From positions 2,976,001 through 3,040,000 of the forward strand of contig NW_027362816.1 of assembly GCF_046119375.1 (NCBI RefSeq): DNA of 64,000 nucleotides. The letters are read 5' to 3'. A model generated the notes under the pieces. It searched no databases. It was not told the origin of the DNA and saw only the letters and a list, made by a program, of their open reading frames with translations. Both the position numbers and the translations under genes were made by a program. Of the stretch, positions 11,760 through 62,303 are shown one piece after another. Source of the stretch: Phyllobates terribilis (taxonomy: Eukaryota). Numbering within the stretch: position 1 is the first letter of the stretch; every line of letters begins with the position of its first letter.

Positions 11760-11888
11760 TGCATAATTAATTTGCATTTTATTGCATGATATAAGTATTT
11801 GATCACCCACCAACTAGAAAGAATTCTGCTGGTTTTTCTTTAAGAAGCCCTCCTACACTGCATTCATAACCTGTATTAATTACACCTA
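11760..11888. mobile_element. Tc1 sub-terminal fragment fused to the 3' end of ZNF gene A
   Basis: ATAAGTATTTG...TTTAAGAAGCCCTCCT...CATTCATAACCTGTATTAATTACACCT resembles 45955..46065 of the Tc1 at 45766. Confidence 0.7.
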
Positions 11889-19100: not shown

Positions 19101-22100
19101 CAGGAACTCCAGGCTTCCTGGTTTCAGCGTCCGGTTTTCGTATGGACCCTGGGAAAGTGCGGGCAGTTCTTGAGTGGGATCTGCCATAGAATCTTAAGGC
19201 ACTACAACGTTTCCTGGGGTTTGCTAATTATTACCGGAAGTTCATTCGTAATTTCTCGTCCATGGTTAAACCTCTCATAGACATGACAAAAAAGGGGACG
19301 GATTTTTCTAGGTGGTCTGACAAGGCTTGTCAAGCTTTCTCCTCCTTGAAAAAAGTTTTGCCTCGGCACCCATAATCATTCAACCTGATGCGTCACAGCC
19401 ATTCATTGTAGAGGTAGACGCTTCCGAGGTAGGGGTGGGAGCAGTATTGTCACAAGGTTCGTCCCCTGGTAAGTGGCATCCGTGCGCCTTTTTCTCTAAA
19501 AAATTGTCGTCCGCTGAGAGGAATTACGATGTCGGCAATAGGGAACTCTTGGCCATTAAGCTAGCTTTTGAGGAGTGGCGCCATTTTTTGGAGGGGGCAG
19601 TCCATCCGGTCACCGTCATCACCGATCACAAGAACCTGCTATATCTGGAGTCCGCAAAACGTCTGAATCCCAGACAAGCCAGGTGGTCGTTGTTTTTTAC
19701 CAGGTTTAATTTTGTCGTTACATATCGTCCTGGGTCAAAAAATGTGAAGGCGGATGCCTTATCTCGTAGTTTCCCTGGGGCCGGGAATACGGATGACCCG
19801 GTTCCTATCCTTCAAGAGGGGGTGGTGGTGTCGGTAGTATGCTCTGAGCTTGAGGAGGAGGTATTGGAGGCTCAGGGGGATGCCCCTGTTGGACCTCCAG
19901 GGAGACTGTTTGTTCCAGATCAGTTACGACAAAAGGTGATCGAGGCACACCATAACTCAGCTTTGGCAAGACACCCAGGGAGTAAAGCAACTGTGGATCT
20001 ACTCTCGCGTCGGTTTTGGTGGCCTAACTTACATATAGAGGTGGTAAATTTTGTTGCGTCCTGTGGGGTTTGTGCGCGCTCTAAGACCCCACATACCCGT
20101 CCGTCTGGGGCCATCTTACCTTTGAAGATCCCGGAGCGTCCTTGGACTCATCTGTCTATGGACTTTATTACGGACCTCCTGCCGTCTTCGGGTAAAACGG
20201 TCATTCTCGTTGTAGTAGACAGGTTCAGCAAGATGGCACATTTTATCGCTCTTCCTGCTCTTCCAAATGCTAAAACTCTTGCGCAGGTGTTCATTGGGGA
20301 GATTGTGAGGCTTCACGGGGTACCCTCCGATGTGGTGTCGGATCGGGGGTCTCAGTTTGTGTCCAAGTTCTGGAAGGCATTTTGTACTCGGCGGGGGATG
20401 CATTTATCGTTCTCATCGGCTTTTCATCCTCAGACCAATGGTAGACGGAACGTCTGAACCAGAGTTTGGAGACATATCTCCAGTGTTTTGTGTCAGAGAA
20501 CCAGGAGGACTGGGCTTCTTTCTTACCTCTGGCAGAGTTTGCTCTTAATAATAGGCGGAGCGAGTCCACTGGTAAGTCCCCGTTTTTTGGGGCATATGGT
20601 TTTCACCCCCAGTTTTGTACTTTCAGTAGGGGGGCTCTTCGGGGGTTCCTGAGGAGGAACGATTTTCCTCATCACTCACTTCAGTATGGAGAGGGGTGCT
20701 GAAGAATCTGAATACTATGGGGAACCGATACAAACGTATGGCTGATAGGAGGAGAGTGTCTGGTCCGGACCTAAGTGTGAACGATCGGGTATGGTTGTCT
20801 ACCAGGTATATAAAACTTAAGGTTTCCTCCTGGAAACTGGGTCCCAGGTTCATCGGGCCATACAGGATCAGTTCTATAATTAATCCAGTGGCATTCCATC
20901 TTGACCTCCCCCCTACGTTTAAAATTCACAATGTGTTCCACAGATCGTTGCTTAAGAGGTATGTGGCGCCGGTGATACCGTCACCTTTACCTCCCCCTCC
21001 AGTGGTGGTCAATGGTAACTTGGAGTTCCAGGTATCAAAGGTCATCGATTCACGCTTTAATCGCCGGTCCCTTCAGTACCTGGTTCATTGGAAGGGGTAT
21101 GGTCCTGAGGAGAGGATGTGGGTTCCTGCGTCGGATATTAACGCAGACCGATTAGTTCGGGCCTTCCACACGACTCACCCGGATAAACCTGGCCCTGAGG
21201 GTCCGGAGGCCCCTCGTAGAAGGGGGGGTACTGTCACGGGTGTGTCGCCACGAAGATCATCACGATTACACAGCCTGACTTCTCGCAGCTGAGTTTTTGG
21301 TGTTTTGTGTTTTTCGGCAGTGAGGGAGTTAACTCTCTCTCTCTGTGCTAGACGAGGTCCAGCCTCGCCCAGCTGCAATCAATGCTGCAGTAGTGGGACT
21401 CCTTCAAATGCCTGCCGGTCTGTTAGGGAAGTGTCGGTGAAAGCATTTCATACAGACAAACAGAGCGGATCGTGGTATTTTGGAGTTCTGAGCTAAGTGT
21501 ATTTGGTGTGGTTTTTCCCTTCCTCGCTTTATCATTTATCTCCTTTCCCGTTGGTGTTCCCTCTGTTGTTGTGGTGTAGTTTTTGTATGCAAGGTGGTTT
21601 TTGTTTTAACCCTTGTACTGTCTCGTTCGTCTAAGTACTGAGTGTTGGCATATTATTTCCTGTTCCCTATTGTTGTGATCGGGGTCCTTCTCAGGACTAG
21701 ATTACTGAGGTGCAGGGATCCTCAGGAGGTAGGGGTTACGCTGGCGGCCTGGACCTCTGTACCTTTAACAGTACCTCCAGGTAGAGGGATTAGTCAGGGC
21801 CCCAGCTTAGGGTCAGTTTAGGCCCCAGACCTCCTGTACGCAGAGACAGCGTGACAGATATCTCCTCTTAATTGATGGGGAAAGGGAGCCTCTCTTTTCC
21901 ATTCCCTCTAAATTATTTTTTCATTCATAGGAAATGACCTATGCTTTTTTTGTTCCAAGCCTCCAAACATAATGTCCTGAACTGATTTCTCGAGTTTGGA
22001 CTCGACTATCCCCATTGTGGTCCAAACTGCCTTTACGAGTTTGTCCATCTCATCTATAGGAAAACAAAGATGGCCAGCATTACCGTCTGAGGAGGATTCG

Positions 22101-28100: not shown

Positions 28101-29503
28101 CATGGCAACTACCAGACCCAGCAGACACAGCGCGGGATCCCGGATACAAGGTAAGAGGGGTTACGTCCCCTTGCTCCCGGAATGCTGCAATCGACTTCGA
28201 TCGCAGCATTTTGGGGATTAATGTGCCACTGTGGGATCGCTCCTGGCACATATTACCGGGTGTTAGCCAAAAGGCCCAGGGCACAGGGACGTACTATTAC
28301 TGACATTGTCAGTAAGGGGTTAATAAACAATTAATAGAGAGATTACAAATCCGGACAGGACACAGATTATTACATGTAATACATTTTTTTTTAATCTGAG
28401 ACTTCTCTGCATTTAGTGGTTACTACTCACCTGGGTAGTCATATGTAGGAATCTCATCTTTACACCACTCATCACCCCTCACATATGTCTCTGTAGTATT
28501 AATATGGGTCAGATCTTCACCCTGAAACAAATATTGTAAAAGTCACAGACAGATGATGGAGAAGTCCCATCTATGATCAGCTCTAATCCTGCCATCTCCA
28601 CCGTCCTCATTACACAAGTATAAAACATATAATACTGGTGGATAAAACAAGACTGAACACAAGACCTTCACAGCCGTCTACACATCATAGGGGAGATCTC
28701 ATGACACCTTCTCTCCATCTACCTGATGATCCTGAGGAACATTGGGGTCTTCTTGTTTACAGTCCTGTGGAAGAAGAGGACGGGGACATCTCTCTGGTGT
28801 TGTCCTCTTACTGGATATATCTGGAGGAAACACATACAGGGACTGAATTCATTCTTTACATACAGATAATTATAGGCCGTGTGTATTTAGTCCTGTCTAT
28901 TACCTGGTGATGTGAGGGGCTGGGGAACCTCCATCATGATGTCCTTGTACAGATCTTTGTGTCCTTCTAAATACTCCCACTCCTCCATGGAGAAATAGAC
29001 AGCGACATCCTGACATCTTATAGGAACCTGACACATACAATGATACCATCATCCCCCCGATCCCTTCATAGCGTTACTGTATAATGTCCCAGCATTCACA
29101 GCAGTGTTACCTCTCCAGTCAGCAGCTCAATCATCTTGTAGGTGAGTTCTGGGATCTTCTGCTCATTGATGTCCTCATGTATCAGGGGGTGAGGTGGAGG
29201 CTCTGTGATTGGGTTCAGGGGTCTTCCCCATCCCTCAGACACAGGGACCTGACAGCGCTCACTAGAGGTCTTCTTCACTACTATGTAATCCTGGTTATGG
29301 AGAGACACATTAATAAATCTCACTACAGACATTTCCAGAGTCCTCATCTCTCCAGTTCTGTCCATCTGTTATTCCCATAGATAAGAATGATGTAATGTGA
29401 CGTCATCAGAATCTCTCACCTCTCCAGTAAGCCGGAAGAGGATCTCTAGGGTGAGGTGGAATATCCTCTCCGCCATCTTCTTCTTCTCCTTCTCCTTCTC
29501 CAT
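11876..29503 (-). CDS. FAX/KRAB-like C2H2 zinc-finger protein A (XlCOF/XlCGF-type), 617 aa, 12 fingers
   Basis: Exons 29420..29503, 29111..29290, 28904..29027 ([34 protein letters not shown]-like), 28723..28820, 28431..28521, 11876..13152. All introns are GT-AG with compatible phases (0,0,1,0,1), 1854 nt open in total. Confidence 0.85.
13388..13555. repeat. 18-bp minisatellite GAGCAGGGCAGCGCGGTG, ~9 copies
   Basis: Tandem array seen directly in the last intron of gene A. Confidence 0.9.
17093..17932 (+). pseudogene. Gypsy gag, frameshifted
   Basis: MDPVAGL...[28 protein letters not shown], zinc knuckle [14 protein letters not shown]. Confidence 0.9.
17929..21200 (+). pseudogene. Gypsy pol (PR-RT-RH-IN-chromodomain), disrupted
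   Basis: ORF pieces 17929..18114, 18115..18813, 18819..19280, 19327..20457, 20466..20702, 20696..21292. Chromodomain [16 protein letters not shown]. Confidence 0.92.
23374..24591 (+). mobile_element. Solo LTR-like element
   Basis: TGTGGCGCCCCTG ... GGGGCGCGTCACA termini. The same start motif occurs at the reverse complement of 36026. No clean TSD. Confidence 0.7.
26389..26686. mobile_element. Palindromic MITE nested in the piggyBac-like element
   Basis: Arms TAGTCTTGAGTGCAAGTGCTCGCTACTTGAGTTTGCATCGGG / CCCGATGAAAACTCAAGTAGCGAGCACTTGTGCTCAACACTA. TSD degenerate (GTTGTCAT vs GTCATCAT). Confidence 0.8.
26720..27015. repeat. Telomere-like minisatellite, 17-bp unit AACCCTAACCCTAGCAC
   Basis: Tandem CCCTAA-containing units seen directly. 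Confidence 0.9.
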
Positions 29504-37912: not shown

Positions 37913-40900
37913 TTAATCCCTTTTTATTTTGTGTAACTGTATATGCTGTATTAAACATGAACCCTGGGTGAAACATTTCCCACATTCTGGACATGAATAT
38001 GACTTTTCTCCAGTGTTAATTCTTTGATGTTTTTGAAGATCTGGTTTCCGGATAAAACATTTCCCACATTCTGAACATGAATATGGCTTCTCTCCTGTAT
38101 GACTTCTGTAATGTTTATGAAGATCTGGTTTCTGGGTAAAACATTTCCCACATTCTGGACATAAATATGGCTTTTCTCCAGTGTGAATTCTTTGATGTTT
38201 TTGAAGATCTGGTTTCTGGATAAAACATTTACCACATTCTGGACATAAATGTGGCTTTTCTCCAGTGTGAATTCTTTGATGTCTTTGAAGATCTGGTTTC
38301 CGGATAAAACATTTCCCACATTCTGAACATGAATATGGCTTCTCTCCTGTGTGAATTCTTTGATGTTTATGAAGATCTGATTTCTGGAGAAAACATTTCC
38401 CACATTCTGAACATGAATATGGCTTCTCTCCTGTATGACTTCTGTAATGTTTAAGCAAATCTGACTTATTGCTGAAACATTTCGCACATTCTGAACATGA
38501 AAATGGCTTTTCTCCTGTGTGACTTCTTTGATGCATAAGCAATTTAGATTTATGTTCAAAACATTCCCCACATTCTTGACATAAATATGGCTTTTCTCCA
38601 GTGTGAATTCTTTGATGTTTATGAAGATCTGGTTTCTGGATAAAACATTTCCCACATTCTGAACATGAATATGGCTTCTCTCCTGTGTGAAATGTTTGAT
38701 GTTTATGAAGATCTCGTTTCTGGATAAAACATTTCCCACATTCTGAACATGAATATGGCTTCTCTCCTGTATGACTTCTGTAATGTTTAAGCAAATATGA
38801 CTTATCGCTGAAACATTTCCCACATTCTGAACATGAAAACGGCTTTTCTCCTGTGTGACTTCTCTGATGTGAAAGCAATTTATATTTAGTTTTAAAACAT
38901 TTCCCACATTCTGAACAGGAAAATGGTTTCTTCCCTGTGGGAATTATTTGATGTTCGACATCCCTTCTCTGGCTTTCATTTTGCTTAACAGTCTGTGATG
39001 AATCCAAGTAGATGACAGATTGAAAAGGCTCAGATGATTGATTTCTGCTCTGAAGGGCTGGAGGTATAGCTGGAATAATGGCACGCTTTTCATAGGTATC
39101 TGGTTTGACACCACAGTCATCTGCCAAGAATAAATCTGATTTTATTATTTTTTAATATCAATGCCTTATATTTTATAACATTTCTCTATACATAATTCTA
39201 TACAAATCAAAGTATAATGAAACTATGACCTAAGACAGTGGTGAGCCACCTGTGCACAAATCCCATGGTACTGAACCCCTAACGTACCATCGACGAACAT
39301 AATACATATACGCAGAAACTTTTGAGGCAATAAAGGGAGGATTAAAAATAAGCTTTATTACATTACAATCTAAAGCAACAGAGAAAAATACACGCCATAA
39401 AAACAATGAAGATGGGGTATTCCCATCTCTGAGAAACTATACCAATATGTAGTAGGTATAATAAAAATAAGATTAGCAAATATCTCCAATTACAAATGTA
39501 GTATAGTTCTTTTGATTCGCTATGTCGCTTACCCCATGTTCAGGGCATTGCAAGTTAGTTGCTAGTGGTCATAACTATGGATACCTAAGCTACTGCAATG
39601 CTCTGCACATGGGATAAGTGACAAAGAATCAGGAGAACTATACCACATTTCTAATTGGAGTCTGAATAAACCTCGACCTCACACATCGACAGGTACTCCG
39701 AGTGTCCTGGGATCACCACGCTGACGTAGCGACCCTCCATCCCCTTACAGCAAAAGGACATGGTGGCAGAGACCACATTTGTGACTGTGCCGCACACTGG
39801 AATGTTATTGTCAGGGGAGTTCCCGATTCGGACCTCGGCCCCCATCAGTCGCTCCAGACCACAGTCCATCCTGTTAGTTATGGCGATGCTGGATATCTTG
39901 TAGCTCTGGCCCAGGTCCAGCTTCCACCAGGGATCCTTCTCCAGGTTGGTGTGGGTGCAGAAGCCACTACTGAAGTCGGTGTCTTTGTTCCCATCGATGG
40001 CGTTCTTAGCCAATATGCTCCTGGTGGCATACGGATAGTCCGACACCTGGGAGGCCACTCTGGTCCTTGCTATGTTTGTGGCTACAGGTGCCGGAGCGCA
40101 TCCCAGAGCCAGAACCACAGATCCCAGTAGAATCAGAGAAGATGGGGGTCGGTACGTCAGCGTGGTGATCCCAGGACACTCGGAGTACATTTCTAATTGG
40201 AGGCATTTTCTATTATTATTATCCTACCTACTATATTTTGGGATAGGATTTTGGAGGTGAGAATACCCCTTCAAGGCTGTATGCTTAGGACTTATCCAGG
40301 ACTCATCCAGATGCCTCATTCCATTGTTTTTTGTGATTACGTTTATCCCTCTTAAATGGCTTTTTGTATTTTTATGTGTTTTCAACTGCGATCTAATAAA
40401 TTGTATTTTTAATCTCTATATTGTCTCACATTTCTCTGTACACAGTCATGGTTGAAATAGTTGACGCCCTTAAAATTGTTCCAGAAAATGAAGTATTTCT
40501 CCTAGAACATTATTGCAATTACACCTGTTTTGTTATAGACACGTTTATTTCCTTTGTGTGTATTGTCACTGATCTTTTCTAGTGAAATGTTCAATGGAGA
40601 ATCAAAACTGGACCTTGACCAGATTATTACCTGACCCTACTTCTAAACCCTTTTCTGATCTGCCTACATACTTCTTGTTGACCGCAGAATGGTTTGGCTT
40701 CTCACTTGACTGTCCTTCCGGGACGTGTACTGCTGCTAGATATTGACCTTGGCTTCTCCAGCTTAGATGTTCACCTGCCTGACTTCTGTGTGTGGCCCGG
40801 CTCTCTTCTTGACATTCAGCTGTAATCTGGCAACTCACAACTACATTACAATTGGAGACATGGCGCCTTTCTGCAGCAAATAAAATCCCATTTAACCAAT

Positions 40901-42126
40901 GAAACTTTGCTGCCAAAATGCGTTAATCAAAAAAGGTGCAAAAAAAAGCTTTTTTTGTTATGCATCAAATCTATCTGCAAGTAAAATGCACGTCAATTAC
41001 TTGTGTGATCAAACTCATAATATAATGACCACAGGATCTGTGACTTCTCTGTATTTAGTGGTTACTACTCACCTGGGTAGTCATATGTAGGAATCTCCTC
41101 TTTACACCGCTCATCACCCCTCACATATGTCTCTGTAGTATTAATATGGGTCAGATCTTCACCCTGAAACAAATATTGTAAAAGTCACAAACAGATGGAG
41201 AAGTCTCATCTATGATCAGCTCTAATCCTGCCATCTCCACCGCTCTCATTACACAAGTATAAAACATATAATACTGGTGGATAAAACAAGACTGAGCACA
41301 AGACCCTCACAGCTGTCTACACATCATAGGGGAGATCTCATGACACCTTCTCTCCATCTACCTGATGATCCTGAGGAACATTGGGGTCTTCTTGTTTACA
41401 GTCCTGTGGAAGAAGAGGACGGGGACATCTCTCTGGTGTTGTCCTCTTACTGGATAGATCTGGAGGAAACACATACAGGGACTGAATTCATTCTTTACAT
41501 ACAGATAATTATAGGCCGTGTGTAATTAGTCCTATTACCTGGTGATGTGAGGGACTGGGGAACCTCCATCATGAAGTCCTTGTACAGATCTTTGTGTTCT
41601 TCTAAATATTCCCACTCCTCCATGGAGAAATAGACAGCGACATCCTGACATCTTATAGGAACCTGACACATACAATGATACCGTCATCCCCCCGATCCCT
41701 CCATAGCGTTACTGTATAATGTCCCAGCATTCCCAGCAGTGTCACCTCTCCAGTCAGCAGCTCAATCATCTTGTAGGTGAGTTCTAGGATCTTCTGGTCT
41801 TTGATGTCCTCATGTATCAGGGGGTGAGGTGGAGGCCTCGTGATTGGGCTCAGGGGTCTTCCCCATCCCTCAGACACAGGGTTCTGACACCGCTCACTAG
41901 AGGTCTTCTTCACTACTATGTAATCCTGGTTATGGAGAGACACATTAATAAATCTCCCTCCAGACATTTCCAGAGTCCTCACCTCTCCAGTTCTGTCCAT
42001 CTGTTATTCCCATAGATAAGAATGATGTAATGTGACGTCATCAGAATCTCTCACCTCTCCAGTAAGCCGGAAGAGGATCTCTAGGGTGAGGTGGAATATC
42101 CTCTCCGCCATCTTGTCTCTGTCCAT
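37913..42126 (-). CDS. FAX/KRAB-like C2H2 zinc-finger protein B, 590 aa, 12 fingers (finger 11 H->N)
   Basis: Exons 42055..42126 (acceptor at 42195), 41746..41925, 41539..41662, 41362..41459, 41073..41163, 37913..39120. GT-AG introns with the same phases as gene A, 1773 nt open. Confidence 0.88.
39651..40190 (-). CDS. F-type lectin (fucolectin) retrocopy, open 179-aa frame
   Basis: Intronless FTL domain (TNIA...[44 protein letters not shown]). Fucose-binding motif H-x26-R-x-D-x4-R is intact. 16-bp TSD ACATTTCTAATTGGAG at 39645..39660 and 40187..40202. Expression unknown. Confidence 0.85.
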   Translation of the reverse strand: MYSECPGITTLTYRPPSSLILLGSVVLALGCAPAPVATNIARTRVASQVSDYPYATRSILAKNAIDGNKDTDFSSGFCTHTNLEKDPWWKLDLGQSYKISSIAITNRMDCGLERLMGAEVRIGNSPDNNIPVCGTVTNVVSATMSFCCKGMEGRYVSVVIPGHSEYLSMCEVEVYSDSN

Positions 42127-43269
42127 ATCAACCTTTGACAGGAAACTTCTCTTATATAGAAGATCTTCACTGAGAGGATCCGATATTGTAGAGACCTGAA
42201 TGAGAAGAAGATGAGAAGATGTAACGTCATCAATAATTCTATGTAATAATACAATCACTGATTCCGGTATAAAGCAGTAATCTGTGGATCTGATCCTGGA
42301 TGATGCCGGAAGAAGAAGTGGATTTTTATGGCGGCCGTTAATGAGCTTCGCTTTGAGGACCGGAGGAGGTTTGGCCTGAACGCTGCACTCGTGGTGTGAA
42401 CACGGACATAGTAGATTATTTAGGGATATTTTCTTGTCCTGCCCTAAACTTGCTTATTCAAGTGAATAGGTCCACGAAAAAGAACAGCCTGTCCACGGAT
42501 GATAGCTGTGTGTTAAAGAGTTTATCCAGGACTATATTATTTTTATAACTATGGGCAGAAGAAGTAAAAGGCAGATAGTTCCTAACTGCCTGCCTGCCCT
42601 GCCTCAATGTCTGCGGGAACAGAGCGGTCACGGACTGCTCCTGCCAGTGACTCTGCGGCTTCTAATGAGTCACGTAGACGGAGCAGCGGCTTCTCTTTGG
42701 CTCTGCTTTCTTGATGGGACGTGACTGACGACATCACACTGATTGTCAGCTGCCTCCCTGCTGCCTCCCTGCGAGCAGCCAGCGGTCAATCAGAGGGATG
42801 ATTTATTTCACCATGCAAAAAAAAACAGACACAAAATAGACGCATAGTGTGAATAACGGCAAATTCTGAGAGACAATAATGGGGAATCTCCACATACCTC
42901 CACCTGCAGACAGGGCCGCCATCAGGGCATCACTGCCCTTACTGCTGTTTGGGGCCCCGTGAGCAGCAGTACAGAGAGGGGCCGGGTCTAGTCAGGGCCC
43001 CCCTCTTGTGCGTCTGCTCACGGCGCTCCATGCACGGCACTCCATGCTGCAATAAAGTGCCGAGCACTGGGGCGCACACCGCCTTAGATGGCGCACATAT
43101 TGGCACCGAGTTCCTTACTGAAGCTGCGCCGCTGCAGCAGCTCCTTCATACTTCAGGAGTCAGGAGCACCCGGTGGCGGCGTGCACCTCCTCATCGCAAC
43201 AGGAGCGCCAGGATGCTGCAGGGATCGTATGTGGGGTAAGTATGACAATTTAATTTTTTTTTTAAAAAT

Positions 43270-44640
43270 TAAATGGAGTGGGGGGAGGATGAGCTGCACA
43301 TGATGGGGAATTGGGAGTGGAGGGAGGATGAGCTGCACATGGTGGGGAATTTGGAGTGGGAGGAGGATGAGCTGCACATGGGGAATTGACAGTGGGGGAG
43401 GATGAGCTGCACATGGGAATTAGCAGTTGGGGGAGGATGAGCTGCACATCATGGGGAATTTGGAGTGGGAGGAGGATGAACTGCACATGGGGAATTGGCA
43501 GTGGGGAAGGATGAGCTGCACGTGATGGGAAATTGGGAGGGGGGAGAGGATGAGCTGCACATGATGTGGAATTTGGAGTGGGAGGAGGATGAGCTGCACA
43601 TGGGGAATTGGCAGTGGGGGAGGATGAGCTGCACATCGGGAATTATCAGTGGGGGATGATGAGCTGCACGTGATGGGGAATTGGGAGTGGGGAGAGGATG
43701 AGCTGCACATGATGTGGAATTTGGAGTGGGAGGAGGATGAGCTGCACATGGGGAATTGGCAGTGGGGGAGGATGAGCTGCACATGGGGAATTATCAGTGG
43801 GGAGAGGATGAGCTGCACGTGATGGGGAATTGGGAGTGGGGAGAGGATGAGCTGCACATGATGGGGAATTTGGAGTGGGAGGAGGATGAGCTGCATATGG
43901 GGAATTGGCAGTGGGGGAGGATGAGCTGCACATGGGGAATTAGCTGCACATGGGAAATTGGCAGTGGGGGAGGATGAGCTGCACATGGGGAATTATCAGT
44001 GGGGGAGGATGAGCTGCACATGGGGAGTTGGCAGTGGGGGAGGATTAGCTGCACATGGGGAATTAGCAGTGGGGGGAGGATGAGCTGCACGTGATGGGGA
44101 ATTGGCAGTGGGGGAGGATGAGCTGCACGTGATGGGGAATTGCCAGTGGGGGGTGGATGAGCTGCACATAATGATGAGTTGGGAGTGGGGGGAATGTTGG
44201 GTGTGGTGAGGAGGATGAACTGCACATGGGGAATTGGCAGTAGGGGGAGGATGAGCTGCACGTGATGGGGAATTGGCAGTGGGGGAGGATGAGCTGCACG
44301 TGATGGGGAATTGCCAGTGGGGGGTGGATGAGCTGCACATAATGATGAGTTGGAAGTGGGGGGAATGTTGGGAGTGGTGAGGAGAATGAACTGCACATGG
44401 GGAATTGGCAGTGGGGGGTGTGAGCTGCACATGGGGAATTGGGAGTGGAGGGGTGAGCTGCACATGGAGGATTGAGAGTGGGGGGAGGATGAGCGCATGG
44501 TGGATTGGGAGTGGTGGGTGGGAAGAGCGAACGGTGAATTAGGGGTGGGGAGAGCAAATGGTGGATTGAAAAGTGGGAGTGGGGAAAGCACATGATGAAT
44601 TGGGAGTGGGGTGGGGAAAGCAAATGGTGAATGGGGGATG
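43270..44640. repeat. G-rich minisatellite, ~34-37 bp unit GGGGAGGATGAGCTGCACATGGGGAATTGGCAGT
   Basis: Tandem array seen directly inside the hAT element. Confidence 0.92.
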
Positions 44641-51839: not shown

Positions 51840-54800
51840 GCCAGAGTCACTGGTATGGTATATGAAGGGAGGTATGTGTCACACTGGTTGCTAGCCTATG
51901 TGAACTAGAACCAATAAACTTTCTGCCAGCATTTTATATGCTGGGGGTTAACTCTTAAAAAGCGTGGTTTTATCGGAATGACAGAGATGGGAGGGATGTC
52001 ATTCCCCATACCTCCACCTCAGGGTGTGGCTGAACAATGTTTAAATGTTCAGTCCTGGTTTTTTTTCTCTGTTGTGAGTTTGGAGTGGCAAAGACTCCAG
52101 ACTGGAAGACCACAGCTCAGAGAGGAGCTGAATGCTGGGACTACAACCTGTGTGGCTAATCCCACACTGCTATGGACTGTGCTTTCGTTTATCTTTTGTT
52201 TTGTTGTTTTGCCAGTAAGGCTGTGTTTAGTTTTGCTGGAGCTGCGGAGATTTATGGCACTAAATAAAGGCTGCAGAGAAAACACGGTTCCTGAGTCTAC
52301 TTCCGGAAGCGACCAAGTGAGGCGTTTTATCTTACCACAGCTGGTGGAGAATGCGGGCAAGATTCCAGGAACACGTGTACCTGCTACAGAGACCGGTGGA
52401 TTTCTTGGGTGAAGGCTGCCAGCCAGCAGGAGACGTCCGGCACCATGGAAGAGCTAATTAAGCACCTGGTGCAGAGCCAGCAGACCATGCAGTAGCAGCA
52501 GTTGCAGAGCATGCAGCAGAGAATGCAACAGCAGCACCGTGAGCAGCTACAGCAGCAACAAGAGACCACTAAGCTGCTGATACAACAAGTTCAGCTCCAG
52601 AAACCGCAGCAACAGGATCAGCATCACCAATAACAGCAGATCGAGTTACTTTTAGAGGCGATCCGTGGCAAGGCGACGGCTTCCGTCAAGTCCAAGTGAT
52701 GATGCATACATCAGGAAGACGGTAAGGAAAGCGTTACAGAAGATGACCCCGGGGCATGATATTGAGGTGTTCCTGACTGTTTTTGAGAGGGTAGCGGAAC
52801 GGGAGAAATTGCCGCTGGAGCAGTGGGTGGAGGTTCTGGCGCCATATTTGACTGGGGACCCGCAGAAGGCTTATTACAATTTGACATTACAGGACGCAAA
52901 GGAATATGCCAAATTAAAAACCAAAATATTGGCACGCTCAGGAGTGACTATGTCTGTCAGAGCACAAAGGGTCCACCACTGGGCGTATGCTGGCGACAGA
53001 CCTCCACGCTCACAAATGTTTGACTTGTTACATCTTGTCCAGAAATGGCTGCAGCCAGAGTCTTCCTCTCCTGCCCAGATGGTTGAGCGTGTGGTAATGG
53101 ACAGGTTCATCCATTCCCTACCCAGGCCGGTGCAGACCTGGGTTGCCCAGGGCGACCGTCGGAATGCAGACGACCTCATAGGTCTTGTAGAGAGATTCCA
53201 AGTGGTTGAAAAATCCCTGGGGATACCCGAGATAGCCAGCTCCCCTTACTGGAGTGCCCAAAAGGGAGTGGGTTCACCACGGAAGGGGTTAAGAGCCACA
53301 ACTGGGGGCATTCCACTTCCACTGAAGGGGCTGCAAGGTCTGTTGTGAAGGATGTGACCTGTTGGCGATGTCGCAATCCGGAACACGTAGCCACCCAGTG
53401 TCATACGTCTGCTGAGCCAATGGACTGCAGTCTAGGGAGACGATGTTCATACTATGCTTACCCAGCCTGCAGTGTGGACTGTCAACCCGGCGAGGGGCCG
53501 CAGGTGTGTGCCGTGTCCGTTAAAGGAGTGATGAACCTAGTGACCTCGATCAGTGCCACCCTTCCCCACCAGCTGATCCCCGCCAGATCTTTGGGCATCC
53601 GCTCCATACATGGGGATGCCAAGAACTACCCGGTGGCCAGAGTGACAGTCGAAACAGACTGTGGCGCCCAATCCCACGAGGTCGGGTTGGTCAAGGACCT
53701 GATACATTCCGTCATATTGGGGCACGATTTTCCCTTGTTCTGGGATTTGTGGGGGAAGGGATCCAGACTCCATCACGGAGACAAAAGCCAGGACCCTAGA
53801 AATACCTCGGTCGACATTGGAAGTGGATCGGTTTCCACTGTGTGTCCTTGTCGGTGAGGACGAGACTGTGACTGAGGAGGCCGACCTCCCTGAGTTAGAG
53901 GTGCCCGGAGAGAACTTTGGGGCAGCTCAAGTTCGGGACTTGACCTTGAAAGGGGCGTGGGACAATGTTACGGTTTGTAATGGTGTTGCTCAAGAGTCGG
54001 GGGCGGTACCCACACTTTGCAATTCAGGGGGTACCAGGTAACCAAACAAAGGTGAAGAGGTAGTGGAACAGCTGTTAGTTCCTGGGCCATACCGTCGGAG
54101 GGTATTAGATATGGCCCACTCACATATTCTAGGGGGGGGGGGGGGACACCTAGGGGTTGAAAAAACTCAGGAGCGAATAGTGAGGAGGTTTTATTGGCCA
54201 GGATGCTACCGGGAGATCTTAAACTATTGTAGGTCCTGCCCCACCTGCCAGATAACCGAGTCCACCTCCCAAGTCCGTAGTCCCTTAGTTCCACTACCTG
54301 TGATAGAAGTTCTCTTTGAGAAGATTGCCATGTACCTCGTGGGTCCCTTAATTAAATCGGCCCAGGGCCATCAATACATCTTGGTCGTCATGGACTATGC
54401 GACCCGGTACCCCGAAGGGGTACCCTTACGGAACTTAGCTCGGGAACTTGTCAACATCTTTGCTAGGACCGGCCTGCTGAAGGAAATCCTGACGGACCAA
54501 GGAACCCCATTCATGAGCAAGGTGATGAAGGAGCTGTGCAAAGTGCTTTAGATCAGGGTTCCCCAACTCCAGTCCTCAAGGCCCACCAACAGGTCATGTT
54601 TTCAGGATTTCCTTAGTATTGCACAGGTGATGGAATTATTGCCTGTGCAGGTGATGGAATTATCACCTGTGTAATACTAAGGAAATCCTGAAAACATGAC
54701 CTGTTGGTGGGCCTTGAGGACTGGAGTTGGGGAACCCTGCTTTAGATTACTCAGCTGCGAACCTGCGTTTGCCATCTGCAAACTGATGGCCTGGTGGAGC

Positions 54801-55199: not shown

Positions 55200-58100
55200 A
55201 CTCAAGTCCTAAGAATGACTGAACCCTCTGTCGTTCCAGTTTTGATTTTTATAGGTTTAGCAGTCATCCCAGCCTGGTCAGAATGGTTCTGATTGTTATC
55301 AGTTGACAACTGCAGTGCTCTATTGACCTGCCTACCACTAGAATATCGTCCAAGTAGAGGATTTATTAGGGTATTCTGCTACCGGAGATGCACTGCGACT
55401 TCTATATAATTTTTGTAAATACCCTCAGAGCCATAGATAGGCCAAAGGGTAGCGCTCTGTACTAGAAGTGCCCGACTTGTTCGTTTATATACAAGGCCAC
55501 CCTCAAGAATTTCTGTTCTTCCATATAGATTGGGATGTGTTCATAGGCATCCTTCACATCTAGCAATCTCATATAAAACACTCTGGAAATAGCATTTTAT
55601 GGTCTCCATTTTGAAGGGCCAGTAGACTAGAAATTTGTTCACCCCTTTCTTTCAAGTTCACTATGGTCCTGAAGGTGCCATCTGTTTTTTTTTTATTAGG
55701 AATAGGGGGAATAGAATCCCTTCCCCTGCTCCTGCACTGGCACCTCTGGGAAATTCTCTTATCTCCTGCCTAGTCCAGTATATCATCTAGTACCCGTCCA
55801 AAGAGAAATTCTCCTTCGCATGGAATTGGGCATAGCTTGACCTTGGACTGAACATCTCCCGGCCAGCTCTTGAGCCATAGTGCTCTAAGTGCAGCTTTTT
55901 ATAGGTTTGCCGATCTGTTTGCAAACATCACTGAGTCTGTCGAGGCGTTTGCGAGGAAAGTAGCTGCTCCTTGAATTATATCCTTAGGGACGTTGTTCTT
56001 AATCTTATCCTCTAACTGCTGTAACCAAATCATCATGGATCTGGCCATGCAGGTTGCCCAAACTGCTGGTTTTATTGCCCCTTCTGAAGACTTCCATATC
56101 TGCTTCAGATACACATCCACTTTTTTATCAAGAGGATCTTCAAAGGGCAGGGTAGATCTTTTGGTTGACTTGGCCACCGCCATGTCTATTTTAGGGGTTT
56201 TGTCCCACATGGCTGCTTCTTCCTCATCAAACAGACACCTCCTTTTGGATGACGACGGCAGTGGATCCTTTTTCTCAGGCTTCCTTCATTCCCTATTAAT
56301 GAGCATTTCAATTCTTTCACTAACCGGAAATATGCAATTTTTCTTTTATACCAAACCCCCGAAACATAATGTCCTGGACTGTTCTTGGGGTTTTAGTATC
56401 TGACATGCCCATAGTAGTTCTTTACCAACTTATCTGTGTCTTCTGTAGGAAAACACGGCCTCCCCCCTGTATCACTATCAGAGGATGAGGAAGAAGAGGA
56501 GTCCGATTCGTCTCTATCCTCAGATATTACAGACTCTTCTGAATCAGCGGCCTGCTGTTTGGGTCTTTTCTCCCTTTTACCACTTTCCTGCTGAATCAGT
56601 GAATTAATGGAGTCTGTAACTTCTATCCTAATTATGGATTTTAAATCCATGGCAAAGTTGGGGGGTTTCTTCAGAGGTGGTCTTCAGAATACAAGAATCT
56701 CTTCATATATGTGCTGGGTAAGTTATCGCCGCACATTCTTTATCTTTTAGCTTGGCGCTACACCTCTTAGGCCCCTCCTAGCAAAGAACACAGAGAGAAA
56801 AGGACCTATTCAACATGATGAACATATACGAAGATCACTCACCACTCTGCCGTTCAGTCTAGGGTACCGGAGATGGAGGCTGGATCAGTTCACATGACCG
56901 TTCTCCCCTGGACGTGGTCGACTCACAAACTGCCTTGTTCTTCTGGTTAATCTGTCACTTGTACAGCTGTCACTGCTGCGTCTCTGACGATAACGCAGCT
57001 GCCGTGGTGGCTGTGGCTGCTGCTACGCCTCCAGCATATCCATGGCATCAAGAGGAAATCTAGCGTAGTATAGTTACCCATCATATGAAGGTGACCTTGT
57101 CGCAGTTGATGGGCACACATAAATTGGCCAAATTATGCGCAAAGAACCTTCATTTTTCAAAGTGACATTAGTCTAGATACTATATTTCTTATATATTCAT
57201 GTATGGAGTGCCGAAGTTTTCTGCTATTTAGATTATGTTTTTCTTCAGAGCACCCGAATAGACCAGTGAGCGACCCCTTTCTTTTCTATTAATCAATTTT
57301 GGGATCCCGCTCCTGGAGCATTGCAGCAGGTACGTGTTCACACTATTAGAAGTTTGATAGCCTTTTTTCTGACCATGTGTCCCTCCCATTCAGTCACAGG
57401 TGGTTTTAACTAGCTCTACCAGCCCATACATTGTAGGTTAAAAGCCCAGCAGAGACATATTGTCCATGCAGGCTTGCAGCCCAAGAGTGGCATATCCAGT
57501 GGTAGCGTAGTATAGTTACCCATCATACGAAGGTGACCTTGTCACGGTTGATGGGCACACATAAATTGGCCAAATTATGCGCAAAGAACCTTCATTTTTC
57601 AAAGTGACATTAGTCTAGATACTGTATTTCTTATATATTCATGTATGGAGTGCCGAAGTTTTCTGCTATCAAGAGGAAAGCTGCCGGCCTCCACCATCTG
57701 GTGGTCAACCGTCCACTATATACCGGACGGACGCCACAGCTCCAGCGTCTGCTGCCGACCTCCCCCCAGAAATCTCGCATTATTTCCGGGTCAGACTTTT
57801 CCTTCCAGCGAGCGGTGTGAAGGGAGCATACCGGCGAGCCCTGTTCATAAACAGCCCCTGCATTTTACTGCCGCATTGCTTTCTGGCACACTTCCTCAGC
57901 AGGGCGCGCTAGATATCCCACTAGTGCGCCTCGCGCTTGCGCAGATCTTGGTTGCCATAACTCCAGCGCACTCAACACGGGGTACGCCAACCACGTTCAA
58001 CAAAGTGGTCATGCAACTGCACACCCCAACGTCCTGGCCAGCGGTAGTGTCTCCAGATCTGTCAGCATCCCAGATCCTTGCAGACACCAACCAGACTTGG

Positions 58101-58255: not shown

Positions 58256-58339
58256 GGGGAAAAACAAGACTGACCACAAGACCATCACAGCCGTCTACAC
58301 ATCATAGGGGAGATCTCATGACACCTTCTCTCCATCTAC

Positions 58340-60181
58340 CTGATGATCCTGAGGAACATTGGGGTCTTCTTGTTTACAGTCCTGTGGAAGAAGAGGACGG
58401 GGACATCTCTCTGGTGTTGTCCTCTTACTGGATAGATCTGGAGGAAACACATACAGGGACTGAATTCATTCTTTACATACAGATAATTATAGGCCGTGTG
58501 GTTTTAGCCCTGTCTATTACCTGGTGATGTGAGGGGCTGGGGAACCTCCATCATGATGTCCTTGTACAGATCTTTGTGTCCTTCTAAATACTCCCACTCC
58601 TCCATGGAGAAATAGACAGCGACATCCTGACATCTTATAGGAACCTGACACATACAATGATACCGTCATCCCCCCGATCCCTCCATAGCGTTACTGTATA
58701 ATGTCCCAGCATTCCCAGCAGTGTCACCTCTCCAGTCAGCAGCTCAATCATCTTGTAGGTGAGTTCTAGGATCTTCTGGTCATTGATGTCCTCATGTATC
58801 AGGGGGTGAGGTGGAGGCCCCGTGATTGGGCTCAGGGGTCTTCCCCATCCCTCAGACACAGGGTCCTGACAGCGCCCACTAGAGGTCTTCTTCACTACTG
58901 TGTAATCCTGGTTATGGAGAGACACATTAATAAATCTCACTACAGACATTTCCAGAGTCCTCAACTCTCCAGTTCTATCCATCTGTTATTCCCATAGATA
59001 AGAATGATGTAATGTGACGCCATCAGAATCCAGGGGCGGAACTACTGCCCGTGCAGCCCGTTCATTGAACGGGGGCCCCGAGGGAGAGGGGGCCCCTCCA
59101 GCAGGGCCGCCATCAGGGCATGACTGCCCTGACTCCAGTATGGGGCCCAGCTGGTAGGGGCCCCCTCGGAGCCCCGTTGGGGGGCCCCCCTCTTGTGCAT
59201 CTCTCTCATGGGGCCCCCAGCCCCATGCTAAGCGCCGGGTCCGGGACATATGAGCGCTGCGCTGCTGCGCCTTCATGATTCCCCTGACTTCCGGTCATGT
59301 GAAGGCGCCGTCACATGGCCGGAAGTCAGGAGAACCTGGTGTCAGCGATTTGGACGAGCGCCAGGATTCTGCAAGGATCGCATGGGGGTAAGTATAACAA
59401 GTTTTATTTTTTTTTTAAATACAATTAACTAGGAGTGGGGGGAGATGAGAGCTGCCCACGTGGGGGGGGGGGTGAGAGCTGCCCACGTGGGGGGGGGGGT
59501 GAGAGCTGCCCACGTGAGGGGGGGGGTGAGAGCTGCCCACGTGAGGGGGGGGCGAGAGCTGCCCACGTGAGGGGGGGGGGCGAGAGCTGCCCACGTGAGG
59601 GGGGGGGGCGAGAGCTGCCCACGTGAGGGGGGGGGGCGAGAGCTGCCCACGTGAGGGGGGGGCGAGAGCTGCCCACGTGAGGGGGGGGCGAGAGCTGCCC
59701 ACGTGAGGGGGGGGCGAGAGCTGCCCACGTGAGGGGGGGGCGAGAGCTGCCCACGTGAGGGGGGGGGCGAGAGCTGCCCACGTGAGAGGGGGGGGCGAGA
59801 GCTGCCCACGTGAGGGGGGGGCGAGAGCTGCCCACGTGAGGGGGGGGCGAGAGCTGCCCACGTGAGGGGGGGGCGAGAGCTGCCCACGTGAGGGGGGGGC
59901 GAGAGCTGCCCACGTGAGGGGGGGGCGAGAGCTGCCCACGTGAGGGGGGGTGAGAGCTGCACACGTGAGGGGGAGTGAGAGCTGCACATGGGGGGGTTAT
60001 GTTTACATAACTTTGTTACCTTATGAAGGGCAGGGGGGCCCCCAAAAATTTCTTGCACAGGGGCCCACTACAGTCTGTGTCCGCCCCTGTCAGAATCTCT
60101 CACCTCTCCAGTAAGCCGGAAGAGGATCTCTAGGGTGAGGTGGAATATCCTCTCCGCCATCTTCTTCTTCTCCTTCTCCAT
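58340..60181 (-). pseudogene. ZNF paralog C: FAX/KRAB-like exons 1-4 only
   Basis: Exons 60104..60181, 58728..58907, 58521..58644, 58340..58437 are open with intact splice sites. Intron 4 homology stops at ~58261 against a DIRS terminus, and no exon 5 or finger exon was found between 42196 and 58260. Confidence 0.75.
59031..60089. mobile_element. hAT MITE with E-box minisatellite in intron 1 of copy C
   Basis: TIRs CAGGGGCGGA / TCCGCCCCTG, perfect TSD TCAGAATC. About 20 units of GAGAGCTGCCCACGTGAG(G)n at 59450..59980. Confidence 0.93.
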
Positions 60182-60437
60182 CCACTAAGGTGTAAGGTAA
60201 ATTTTCTAGAAGATGGAAGATAATGATGAGAACGACTGAATCTACAGGATCCTAAATGGAAGGAAGATGGCTGCTCTGTGGCCCAGGAGCTGTGATGAGG
60301 TCACAGGAGGGGAGGAGTCAGGGGTCACATGATCAGGGGCCTCAGTGGATGCAGGACTCTGCTGTGCTGGTTGTCATGGTGCTGGATGAGCTGAAGTTTA
60401 TGTGTGGGGTCAGGAGGGGTTTACAGTGTGGATGTAG

Positions 60438-62049: not shown

Positions 62050-62303
62050 GGAGTATCCCTATTTATCTATCTGCACCCTCTGAATAGAGCGAGTTCTGCG
62101 TCACTAAGATGAATGATGATGGGAGTGTATGTGCATGAAGGAAGCTGTCAGTTTCTATGCACCTTCACTTACTTCACTATGGCTGTATACATGTTTGTAT
62201 GTATTTCAGCCATTAACTCCTTGTTCGGTCTAAGATGATGTAAGGTGGCTTTCGGACACACAGTTGATGGGAGGTATATATCACAGAGGTGGTTGTCCTA
62301 GAC

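What the first reader, a model, noticed from the sequence alone, without database searches (positions are those of the whole stretch)
39645..40202. Retrocopy whose start and stop codons both come from its own target-site duplication, with an inverted internal piece and no poly(A)
Seen: the 16-bp TSD ACATTTCTAATTGGAG supplies the ATG (CAT at 40188..40190) in one copy and the TAG (CTA at 39651..39653) in the other. About 40141..40188 is an inverted copy of the lectin's own 3' part (39691..39737) with one substitution and one indel, joined through GATGG microhomology. It adds [15 protein letters not shown] in frame ahead of the hydrophobic leader. There is no poly(A) or 3' UTR. Inference: twin-priming or template switching during target-primed reverse transcription, possibly from a multi-domain F-lectin mRNA with the inverted piece coming from a second domain.
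Basis: partly seen in the sequence, partly recalled or inferred. Interest (0 to 1): 0.7.

Follow-up and report, generated by a model that had tools for sequence, protein, structure and literature searches.

The report
Fucolectin retro-pseudogene with inverted remnant
An intron-less piece of a golden poison frog lectin message, lacking its poly(A) tail, was pasted into a hairpin transposon inside a zinc-finger gene; the "lectin gene" annotated there takes its start and stop codons from the duplicated target DNA, so it is most likely a decaying pseudogene whose inverted end suggests a Penelope-type copying enzyme.

Summary
A 526-bp, GC-rich (56%), intron-less F-type lectin fragment sits between two perfect 16-bp repeats (39645-39660, 40187-40202). 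The 179-codon ORF (39651-40190, minus strand) takes its ATG and TAG from those repeats. Positions 40141-40188 are an inverted copy of 39693-39741, with one substitution and one indel. There is no poly(A) or 3'UTR, and the parent's last ~10 codons are missing.

The host site is a very abundant palindromic MITE. Its other arm, and family members seen in reads, carry the 16-mer once, so the duplication is real. The genome is Phyllobates terribilis. The ORF is annotated "fucolectin-like" on at least 7 scaffold loci, all in KRAB-ZNF genes. Intron-less 149-aa sister copies keep the native start (MNLVSS...). The 40140/40141 junction is therefore probably a later deletion, not the original template switch.

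The two cDNA start points lie 32 nt apart and both DNA ends were primed. Together with the 16-bp duplication and the missing poly(A), this matches Penelope-like-element insertions better than L1 twin priming. That remains inference.

The scan found paralogous, longer head-to-head copies on other DNA of this genome (s1-204902, s1-225788, s1-230056). I could not read them.

The "second lectin domain" idea is rejected. Interest is moderate.

The parts
39414..39644 (.). Host MITE: left arm, loop and the first part of the right arm
   Evidence: Nested inverted repeats I1, I3, I4 and I5. The reconstructed empty element folds at -77.8 kcal/mol against -28.8 +/- 4.5 for shuffles. Summed contig depth is 1e5-8e5 in DNA runs, and contigs diverge before 39414.
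39484..39499 (-). Single copy of the target 16-mer (1 mismatch) in the opposite MITE arm; an internal 'empty site'
   Evidence: (I3, I4). It pairs with the target in the hairpin.
39645..39660 (+). Target-site duplication, left copy. It supplies the last base of the Asp codon, then Ser, Asn and TAG of the ORF
   Evidence: (D13).
39661..39692 (-). 32-nt 'tail': the 3'-most lectin stretch, present in the long arm but not in the inverted remnant. It is the offset between the two cDNA start points
   Evidence: alignment ends at 39693. Compared with the 30-40-bp tail of Penelope-like elements.
39661..40140 (-). Arm A: spliced fucolectin coding fragment, from parent codon 5 (residue 17 of the 179-aa ORF) to about 10 codons before the parent's stop
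   Evidence: It has no intron at 40083/40084, where a genomic paralog contig diverges.
39693..39741 (-). Part of arm A that is repeated in inverted orientation
   Evidence: (I2).
40141..40186 (+). Arm-B remnant: inverted copy of the lectin's 3' part, sense on the + strand. Its antisense encodes the ORF's first 15-16 residues
   Evidence: At the site matching 39729 it keeps the base seen in most other copies and in the related species.
40187..40202 (+). Target-site duplication, right copy. It supplies the ATG (CAT at 40188-40190). Its first 2 nt (AC) are shared with the arm-B end
40203..40272 (.). Host MITE: rest of the right arm
   Evidence: (I1, I4), and depth.
39651..40190 (-). 179-aa ORF annotated in the public genome as 'fucolectin-like'
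   Evidence: The exact protein is on 4 scaffolds, with near-identical variants on 3 more.
37913..39127 (-). C2H2 zinc-finger exon of the host gene, about 520 bp downstream of the insert on the same strand
   Evidence: zf-H2C2_2 4e-90. KRAB-ZNF gene models span the lectin on the same strand at the paralogous loci.

Best explanation
The insert is a retro-pseudogene, and I read its history in four steps.

1. Shown or nearly shown. A spliced internal fragment of a single-domain fucolectin mRNA was reverse-transcribed into a break with a 16-nt stagger. The fragment has no 5'UTR, no last ~10 codons, no 3'UTR and no poly(A). The break lay in the stem of an AT-rich palindromic MITE, inside a KRAB zinc-finger gene and in the gene's orientation.

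2. Inferred, about 0.45. Both 3' ends of the break primed cDNA on the lectin RNA, at two internal sites 32 nt apart, with 2-4 nt or no homology to the target. This gave two arms lying head to head. The geometry matches what Penelope-like-element (PLE) RT-endonuclease does, so a frog PLE acting in trans is the most likely enzyme:
- both strands are cut and extended;
- there are two adjacent internal start sites;
- a 30-40-bp 'tail' sits at one end;
- the target-site duplication is variable, about 10-16 bp;
- there is no poly(A).

3. Inferred, about 0.65-0.7. In the ancestor of the window's subfamily, a deletion removed the centre and most of the second arm. The deleted centre included the native ATG and first four codons of arm A. 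Only 46-48 bp of the second arm remained next to the target duplication. By chance this put an ATG in the duplicated target in frame with the lectin, and the other copy of the target supplies TAG.

4. Largely shown from protein annotation and read depth. The locus then multiplied with its zinc-finger gene, to roughly 10-20 copies.

The 179-aa ORF is an accident of this history and is most likely not a working lectin. It has lost the second Cys of the fucose-contacting Cys-Cys pair, and one copy has lost a binding Arg.
For: Real insertion:
- The 16-bp repeat is perfect.
- The opposite MITE arm has the 16-mer once, and the empty element folds as an almost perfect hairpin with target and partner paired.
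- MITE family members in reads join 39655 to 40190. Others run from ...CTATAC into the target, or from ...TTGGAG into MITE sequence, without any lectin.

RNA origin:
- The ORF is one 540-bp block. By contrast, P0003 (84% identical, same species, chromosome) spans 7849 bp, a Ranitomeya homolog 2617 bp and a Hyla homolog 4604 bp.
- A 225-nt DNA contig, 92% alike, lies on 39917-40083 and then diverges, in two independent DNA runs. An RNA-type contig appears to cross that point.

Truncation at the 3' end: mRNA contigs of a related species run past 39661 into ...SVTNRNKVC / ...SVANGSKNTVC.

Single origin and direction of change:
- The 179-aa and 149-aa forms make one clade (100/99), sister to P0003/P0127.
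- The 179-aa forms (100/100) nest among the 149-aa forms.
- The 149-aa forms are also single 450-bp blocks in KRAB-ZNF loci. They start with the native MNLVSS.
- They lie in arm-A orientation. The next gene model starts 19 nt after their stop, which is the ATG of M169 only in the arm-A context.
- Six of seven fixed differences are derived in the 179-aa line. These include C111G and P112L in the Cys-Cys motif (motif role from PMC5712786).

Copy number: unique flanks and insert have summed depth of about 160-500, against about 12-18 for single contigs.

PLE geometry:
- 32-nt offset.
- PMC11167929: both strands are cut and extended, there are two adjacent internal RT start sites not homologous to the target, the tail is the stretch between them, and cleavage prefers AT-rich/ATT DNA.
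- PMC8557442 and PMC3846280: inverted 5'-truncated copy head to head, variable target duplication, host genes copied in trans.
Against: - I could not read the DNA of any paralogous copy because the assembly file is too large for the tool. That the 149-aa copies share this target duplication and MITE, and that a long second arm exists, rests on gene-model geometry and on unchecked scan notes.
- A search for annotated proteins containing the antisense-lectin ORF was blank.
- The insert has no PLE sequence, pseudo-LTR or hammerhead (Rfam 0 hits). The anole PLE protein needs a binding motif in its own RNA in vitro, so action on a lectin mRNA would be non-canonical.
- Any reverse transcriptase plus hairpin self-priming or end joining could give a similar product.
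- The 6:1 asymmetry of derived changes is not significant (p about 0.13).
- The listed nucleotide differences show about 8 non-synonymous to 6 or more synonymous. That is fewer non-synonymous than pure neutrality predicts, though the list is truncated and mixed with parent-gene contigs.
- A contig from a probable RNA run covers the short form and its flank at the same low depth as the flanks (about 9.5). Transcription, at least as part of the host intron, is therefore not excluded.
Confidence: 0.55

Rival explanations
1. The window's structure is the primary insertion product. One long cDNA came from one break end and a 46-48-nt cDNA from the other (or a short fold-back), and they were joined by microhomology during the same event. 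The 149-aa copies with a native ATG would then come from a separate retro-insertion of the same mRNA.
For: The structure is self-consistent, with 2-nt (AC) and up to 4-nt (CTCC) overlaps at the two outer junctions. I have not seen the DNA of the 149-aa loci. The 179-aa forms sit on a long branch (0.074) compared with 0.006-0.013 for the 149-aa forms. That could mean an older, separate event.
Against: Two independent intron-less insertions of one lectin mRNA, in the same orientation just upstream of ZNF exons of the same gene family, is unparsimonious. The 179-aa clade is nested inside the 149-aa forms and shares R44 with P0125. Unchecked scan notes describe the longer copies as lying in the same MITE with a 16-bp repeat.
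Confidence: 0.2
2. The history is the same, but the enzyme was a LINE reverse transcriptase (L1/Tx1-type twin priming, or hairpin self-priming of the first cDNA strand), not a Penelope-like element.
For: A 16-bp duplication is in the LINE range. Twin priming, and fold-back or inverted duplications at TPRT breaks, are documented for L1, including cDNAs of host genes (bioRxiv 10.1101/2024.12.14.628481; list).
Against: There is no poly(A), and both priming sites are internal to the coding sequence. The nick contexts (TTGGAG/GC and AAATGT/GG) are unlike TTTT/A. In L1 twin priming the inverted part lies upstream of the direct part on the RNA, whereas here the two overlap completely. The 32-nt offset has no LINE explanation.
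Confidence: 0.25
3. No retrotransposon was involved. A cDNA or DNA fragment was captured as filler during repair of a staggered break in the hairpin-forming MITE, for example by polymerase-theta end joining with snap-back synthesis.
For: The palindromic MITE could form a cruciform prone to breakage. The junctions show only 2-4-nt overlaps. Snap-back synthesis gives inverted repeats.
Against: A clean 16-bp duplication with no loss of target bases is typical of enzyme-made staggered nicks. Filler insertions are usually tens of bp, not about 0.5-1 kb of spliced mRNA sequence.
Confidence: 0.07
4. The 179-aa ORF is a young functional gene, a secreted or membrane-tethered lectin-like protein, kept open by selection.
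For: The ORF is intact in at least 7 annotated copies. The His-Arg-Arg triad is kept in most. The hydrophobic leader is retained. The listed differences are not strongly enriched for non-synonymous changes. A probable RNA contig covers it.
Against: The copies differ by 0-2 residues, so an intact ORF proves little. Derived changes hit the otherwise invariant Cys-Cys-Pro motif, and one copy has R107W. The start codon, stop codon and first 16 residues come from target DNA and antisense lectin. RNA depth equals that of the intronic flanks, so there is no sign of a transcript of its own.
Confidence: 0.06

Closest known systems
Penelope-like element (PLE) insertions, including host genes copied in trans (Adineta vaga; anole Poseidon in vitro)
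   Same: A direct copy and an inverted, 5'-truncated copy lie head to head. A 30-40-bp 'tail' sits at one end, equal to the distance between two internal RT start sites (32 nt here). Both DNA strands are primed. The target duplication is variable and fairly long. There is no poly(A). The target is AT-rich.
   Different: There is no pseudo-LTR, PLE sequence or hammerhead in or beside the insert. The known host-gene cases are framed by pseudo-LTRs and keep their introns, whereas this copy is spliced. I found no vertebrate example of a PLE copying a host mRNA in the paper library, but that is not proof of absence.
LINE-1 processed pseudogenes with 5' inversion (twin priming)
   Same: A spliced cDNA of a host gene with a 16-bp target duplication, an inverted segment at the 5' side, and short overlaps at the junctions.
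   Different: No poly(A) or 3'UTR. The 3' end lies inside the coding sequence. The nick sites are not TTTT/A. The inverted segment duplicates the 3' part instead of continuing upstream of it.
Hairpin (snap-back) second-strand priming by reverse transcriptases, and fold-back junctions at TPRT breaks
   Same: Gives inverted duplications of the cDNA, with 2-bp overlaps at the turn.
   Different: Predicts a symmetric centre and gives no reason for a fixed ~32-nt shortfall of one arm. The centre is deleted in this copy, so this cannot be judged here.
F-type lectins (fucolectins; Anguilla anguilla agglutinin type)
   Same: Pfam F5/8 type C / NedA-like domain. His80-Arg107-Arg114 correspond to His52-Arg79-Arg86. 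84% identity to a chromosomal P. terribilis fucolectin.
   Different: The second Cys of the contiguous Cys82-Cys83 pair is Gly. The C-terminal ~10 residues, including a conserved Cys, are missing. The N-terminus is foreign.

Membership tests
Processed pseudogene / retrocopy | Lacks the parent gene's introns | tested here: met
   The ORF is one 540-bp block, whereas homologs span 7849, 2617 and 4604 bp. A genomic paralog contig diverges at 40083/40084.
Processed pseudogene / retrocopy | Flanked by a target-site duplication, with an empty site known | tested here: met
   A perfect 16-bp repeat. The 16-mer occurs once in the opposite MITE arm and in MITE family contigs. No orthologous or allelic empty site was available.
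LINE-1-type retrocopy | 3' poly(A) next to the duplication, and a 3'UTR | tested here: not met
   The insert ends inside the coding sequence at ...TCAGA followed by the duplication. Parent-type mRNAs run on.
LINE-1-type retrocopy | First nick at a TTTT/A-like site | tested here: not met
   The nick contexts are TTGGAG/GCATTT and AAATGT/GGTATA.
L1 twin-priming inversion | The inverted 5' segment lies upstream of, and next to, the direct 3' segment on the RNA | tested here: not met
   The inverted piece equals 39693-39741 of the direct arm, a complete overlap near the 3' end.
Penelope-like-element-type insertion | An inverted 5'-truncated copy head to head with the direct copy | tested here: met
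   The arm-B remnant (40141-40186) faces arm A. Its original length is not known from my data.
Penelope-like-element-type insertion | A 30-40-bp tail at one end, equal to the distance between two internal RT start sites | tested here: met
   The 32-nt offset at 39661-39692. Definition.
Penelope-like-element-type insertion | PLE sequence: pseudo-LTR, hammerhead ribozyme, or RT/GIY-YIG ORF | tested here: not met
   The insert is lectin only. Rfam gives 0 matches in the whole window.
Penelope-like-element-type insertion | AT-rich target with an ATT motif at the cleavage sites | tested here: inconclusive
   The target MITE has GC 0.37 and the 16-mer contains ATT twice. The position of the cut relative to ATT is not defined in the paper text I read.
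Functional F-type lectin | His-Arg-Arg fucose-binding triad | tested here: met
   H80, R107 and R114 are conserved in the alignment. Copy P0123 has W107.
Functional F-type lectin | Contiguous Cys-Cys disulfide that contacts fucose | tested here: not met
   The ORF reads MDCGLERL, against MDCCPERL or a close variant with the Cys-Cys pair intact in all ten homologs aligned and in the 149-aa sister copies. Role of the pair from PMC5712786.
Functional F-type lectin | N-terminal signal peptide and native C-terminus | tested here: not met
   The native MNLV is replaced by 16 foreign residues, and the last ~10 residues are missing. Whether the buried leader still works was not tested.
MITE (host element) | Short, non-coding, palindromic and very high in copy number | tested here: met
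   About 317 bp without the insert. Hairpin at -77.8 kcal/mol, z about -11. Summed depth 1e5-8e5. Its superfamily and its own target duplication were not determined.

The most novel reading that the evidence does not exclude
A vertebrate Penelope-like element's RT-endonuclease copied an ordinary spliced host mRNA in trans, without any pseudo-LTR. It primed from both cut DNA ends at two RNA sites about 32 nt apart and left a head-to-head retrocopy with no poly(A). If so, PLEs would be a second, so far unrecognised source of retrocopies in amphibians, fish and reptiles. Such copies would be recognisable by a 15-16-bp duplication, inverted arms and a 30-40-nt offset.
Probability: 0.3. Interest if true: 0.65.

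Novelty: new variant of a known kind. Interest (0 to 1): 0.42.

Why it matters
There are three reasons.

1. Annotation. At least seven 'fucolectin-like' and four 'fucolectin-1-like / pentraxin fusion protein-like' protein models in the P. terribilis reference are copies of one retro-pseudogene. In the 179-aa forms the start and stop codons are target-site DNA. They inflate the apparent immune-lectin repertoire of a poison frog.

2. Mechanism. Retrocopies that lack poly(A) and are truncated at both ends are poorly explained by the L1 model. This one carries the geometric signature recently shown in vitro for a Penelope-like element. It gives a concrete pattern to search for, which could show whether PLEs make host-gene retrocopies in non-mammalian vertebrates.

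3. Interpretation of inverted pieces. A short 'inverted piece' can be the stump of a deleted palindrome arm, so junctions should not be read as primary template switches without comparing paralogs.

Tried and rejected
- Second-domain origin of the inverted piece. Rejected: it is 96% identical to the copy's own arm, and the parents have a single domain.
- Another lectin copy or a paralogous empty intron in the window. None was found. tblastn and blastn self-searches found only the internal inverted repeat. The block 41036-42114 is repeated at 28394 and 58261, but homology stops at 41036.
- DNA of paralogs, the parent gene and orthologs. Nine look-ups with the look-up of encoding contigs gave no DNA. 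Seven returned gene-model coordinates only because the assembly files are too large. Two found no record of the protein.
- Proteins containing the antisense-lectin ORF, which would have shown an upstream inverted arm at the 149-aa loci. Blank, and uninformative.
- Rfam scan for hammerhead or other RNAs in the window. 0 matches.
- Large ORFs of the window scanned for RT. Only a Gypsy RNaseH-integrase, a Tc1-type transposase and a SCAN domain turned up, with no PLE or LINE RT.
- Growth of a long palindrome from the 48-bp inverted repeat. Rejected on logic: annealing of the short repeats would duplicate the flanks, not the spacer, and could not restore the native ATG.
- Branch-length asymmetry as evidence for two events or a mutational burst. 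The 6:1 ratio has p about 0.13, so it is not significant.
- dN/dS. It could not be computed properly without paralog DNA. The rough count from read differences is inconclusive.
Full report
WHAT IS THERE

The window comes from the golden poison frog, Phyllobates terribilis. The 179-aa ORF at 39651-40190 (minus strand) is identical to an NCBI protein found on four scaffolds of GCA_046119375.1 and 99% identical to XP_073517862.1. It is an F-type lectin domain (Pfam PF22633 3e-23, PF00754 6e-14).

The lectin sequence occupies 39661-40186 (526 bp, GC 0.557). It sits inside AT-rich DNA (GC 0.30-0.37). It is bracketed by a perfect 16-bp direct repeat at 39645-39660 and 40187-40202 (0.02 matches expected by chance).

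- The ATG (CAT at 40188-40190) and the TAG (CTA at 39651-39653) both lie in the repeats.
- Positions 40141-40188 are an inverted copy of 39693-39741, with one substitution and one single-base gap.
- Read on the minus strand, this piece gives [15 protein letters not shown](P) in frame ahead of the lectin's hydrophobic leader.
- There is no poly(A) and no 3'UTR.
- The lectin stops at ...VYSD, whereas related proteins continue SVTNRNKVCS.
- mRNA contigs of a related species run past 39661 into exactly such sequence.

THE TARGET IS A PALINDROMIC MITE, AND THE DUPLICATION IS REAL

The flanks form nested inverted repeats: 39411-39470 with 40213-40272, 39466-39500 with 40186-40220, 39484-39518 with 39626-39660, and 39520-39552 with 39594-39626.

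- With the insert and one repeat copy removed, the ~317-bp element folds into an almost perfect hairpin, at -77.8 kcal/mol against -28.8 +/- 4.5 for shuffles.
- In that fold the 16-mer is paired to a single partner copy (one mismatch) at 39484-39499. This partner is an internal empty site.
- In public DNA runs of the same species these MITE parts have summed contig depths of 1e5-8e5.
- Family members join 39655 to 40190. Others run from ...GAACTATAC into the 16-mer, or from ...TTGGAG into MITE sequence, with no lectin between.

I found no allelic or orthologous empty site.

IT IS RNA-DERIVED

The ORF is a single 540-bp block at all four loci. The closest ordinary genes are much longer:

- P. 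terribilis P0003 (175 aa, 84% identical, on an 817-Mb chromosome): 7849 bp.
- A Ranitomeya homolog: 2617 bp.
- A Hyla homolog: 4604 bp.

In two independent DNA runs, a 225-nt contig that is 92% alike lies on 39917-40083 and then diverges. That point is the signal-peptide/domain boundary (codon 36). A contig from a probable RNA run appears to run on past it: one of its pieces starts at 40066. I could not obtain the parent's DNA, so the other junctions are not mapped.

ONE EVENT, THEN GENE-CLUSTER DUPLICATION

The 90% cluster of the ORF holds seven distinct proteins, all from P. terribilis unplaced scaffolds. Four are 179-aa forms and three are 149-aa forms.

- Every one is a single block (540 or 450 bp) inside or beside KRAB zinc-finger gene models on the same strand.
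- In the window, the C2H2 exon at 37913-39127 lies about 520 bp downstream on the same strand.
- In a maximum-likelihood tree the seven form one clade (100/99), sister to the chromosomal genes P0003/P0127. The 179-aa forms (100/100) nest among the 149-aa forms.
- Depth of the unique flanks and of the insert (about 160-500) against single contigs (about 12-18) suggests roughly 10-20 copies of the whole locus.

THE INNER JUNCTION IS PROBABLY SECONDARY

The 149-aa forms begin with the native MNLVSSLILL. The window form reads [10 protein letters not shown] at the same place.

The 149-aa forms are in arm-A orientation. The next gene model begins 19 nt after their stop, and only in the arm-A sequence context is that the ATG of Met169.

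So the ancestral insert contained the start codon that the window copy lacks, exactly where the inverted piece now abuts. The simplest history is a deletion that removed the centre and most of a second, inverted arm, leaving its last 46-48 bp next to the target duplication.

Because the sister copies have Val, not Pro, at the junction codon, the overlap at the junction can be at most 2-3 nt.

Six of the seven fixed amino-acid differences are derived on the 179-aa line. They include Cys111Gly and Pro112Leu. These fall in the otherwise invariant Cys-Cys-Pro motif, whose disulfide contacts fucose (PMC5712786). One copy also has Arg107Trp. This looks like decay.

Earlier notes of this scan, on other pieces of the genome, describe 1018-1406-bp head-to-head fucolectin copies with a 16-bp repeat in a MITE in a ZNF intron. 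They gave me the deletion idea. I could not read those sequences, so they remain a lead. My own support is the protein and gene-model evidence above.

HOW THE ORIGINAL INSERTION WAS MADE

On the + strand, the left copy of the 16-mer ends ...TTGGAG and is followed directly by antisense lectin. This is as if that 3' end primed cDNA on the mRNA. One paralogous mRNA reads ...GACTCC... there, which would allow up to 4 nt of overlap.

On the minus strand, the other 16-mer copy ends ...AAATGT and is followed by antisense lectin of the remnant, with a 2-nt overlap. Both 3' ends of a break with a 16-nt stagger therefore carry cDNA.

The two cDNAs start at mRNA positions 32 nt apart (39661 against 39693), both inside the coding sequence.

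This does not fit L1:
- there is no poly(A);
- the nick sites are unlike TTTT/A;
- in twin priming the inverted part lies upstream of the direct part on the RNA and does not overlap it.

It fits what is known of Penelope-like elements:
- their genomic copies often carry an inverted, 5'-truncated copy head to head, a 30-40-bp tail at one end, and variable target duplications;
- they can copy host genes in trans (PMC8557442, PMC3846280);
- a purified anole PLE protein cuts and extends both strands;
- that protein starts reverse transcription at two adjacent sites internal to the RNA 3' end, without homology to the target, and the tail is the stretch between those sites;
- it prefers AT-rich DNA (PMC11167929).

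Unchecked scan notes also say that PLE insertions in this genome lie as head-to-head arms within 15-16-bp duplications.

Against the PLE reading: the insert has no PLE sequence or hammerhead, and the anole enzyme needs a motif in its own RNA. I rate the PLE reading at about 0.45 and a LINE or generic RT with hairpin at about 0.25. Repair-type capture is rated low.

IS THE ORF ANYTHING?

The frame from the ATG in the duplication to the TAG in the other copy is 4 + 526 + 7 = 537 nt, or 179 codons. It is an accident of the insert's present length.

- The copies differ by 0-2 residues, so the intact ORFs say little.
- A contig from a probable RNA run spans 39692-40551 at depth about 9.6, the same as the intronic flanks (9.5). 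This argues for read-through within the host gene and not for a transcript of its own.
- A rough count of listed differences, about 8 non-synonymous to 6 or more synonymous, is inconclusive.

VERDICT

This is a retro-pseudogene of a known general kind with an unusual architecture: no poly(A), both ends primed, and a Penelope-like geometry. In this copy the architecture is further obscured by a probable internal deletion. The scan has met paralogous copies before.

Noticed in passing
window 41036-42114, 28394-29479, 58261-59030: A ~1.1-kb block occurs three times in the window at 96% identity, on the same strand. It includes the ORF 41653-42000 (minus strand), which has a frog ZNF-type N-terminal look (...[15 protein letters not shown]). 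Homology stops at 41036, so the lectin-bearing intron part is not repeated here.
   Followed up: partly
window 40407-40607: A second very high-copy repeat lies just right of the MITE, with summed contig depth 5e4-6.5e5 in DNA runs. Contigs diverge before 40442/40460. Its family was not identified.
   Followed up: no
window 37913-39127 and 11888-13102: Two C2H2 zinc-finger arrays with an 84-bp period, both read on the minus strand, about 75% identical to each other. The first is the exon just downstream of the lectin insert. At paralogous loci, public gene models start inside the lectin tail (Met169) and run into the ZNF exons.
   Followed up: partly
window 39753, 39761, 39780, 39887, 39964, 39970: In both DNA runs laid on the window, every contig shows the non-window base at these sites (for example Leu144 instead of Met144). 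Yet seven annotated copies carry the window state. The commoner 149-aa-like type probably dominates the low-coverage contigs.
   Followed up: partly
window 43262-44623 (minus strand) and 60256-62112: Long overlapping ORFs made of proline/serine-rich short repeats (MCSSSSPTANSPCAAHPPP...-type, and extensin-like below the Pfam cutoff). These are probably tandem-repeat DNA, not genes.
   Followed up: no
window 52665-53348, 19327-20457, 8923-9702: A SCAN-domain ORF (2.5e-14), a Gypsy-type RNaseH-integrase ORF, and a Tc1/DDE_3 transposase ORF. No Penelope or LINE reverse transcriptase was seen among the large ORFs tested.
   Followed up: partly
window 57062-57228 and 57505-57671: A small element with ~167-bp terminal direct repeats, flanked by CAAGAGGAAA on both sides. 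Rfam finds no hammerhead there at gathering threshold.
   Followed up: partly
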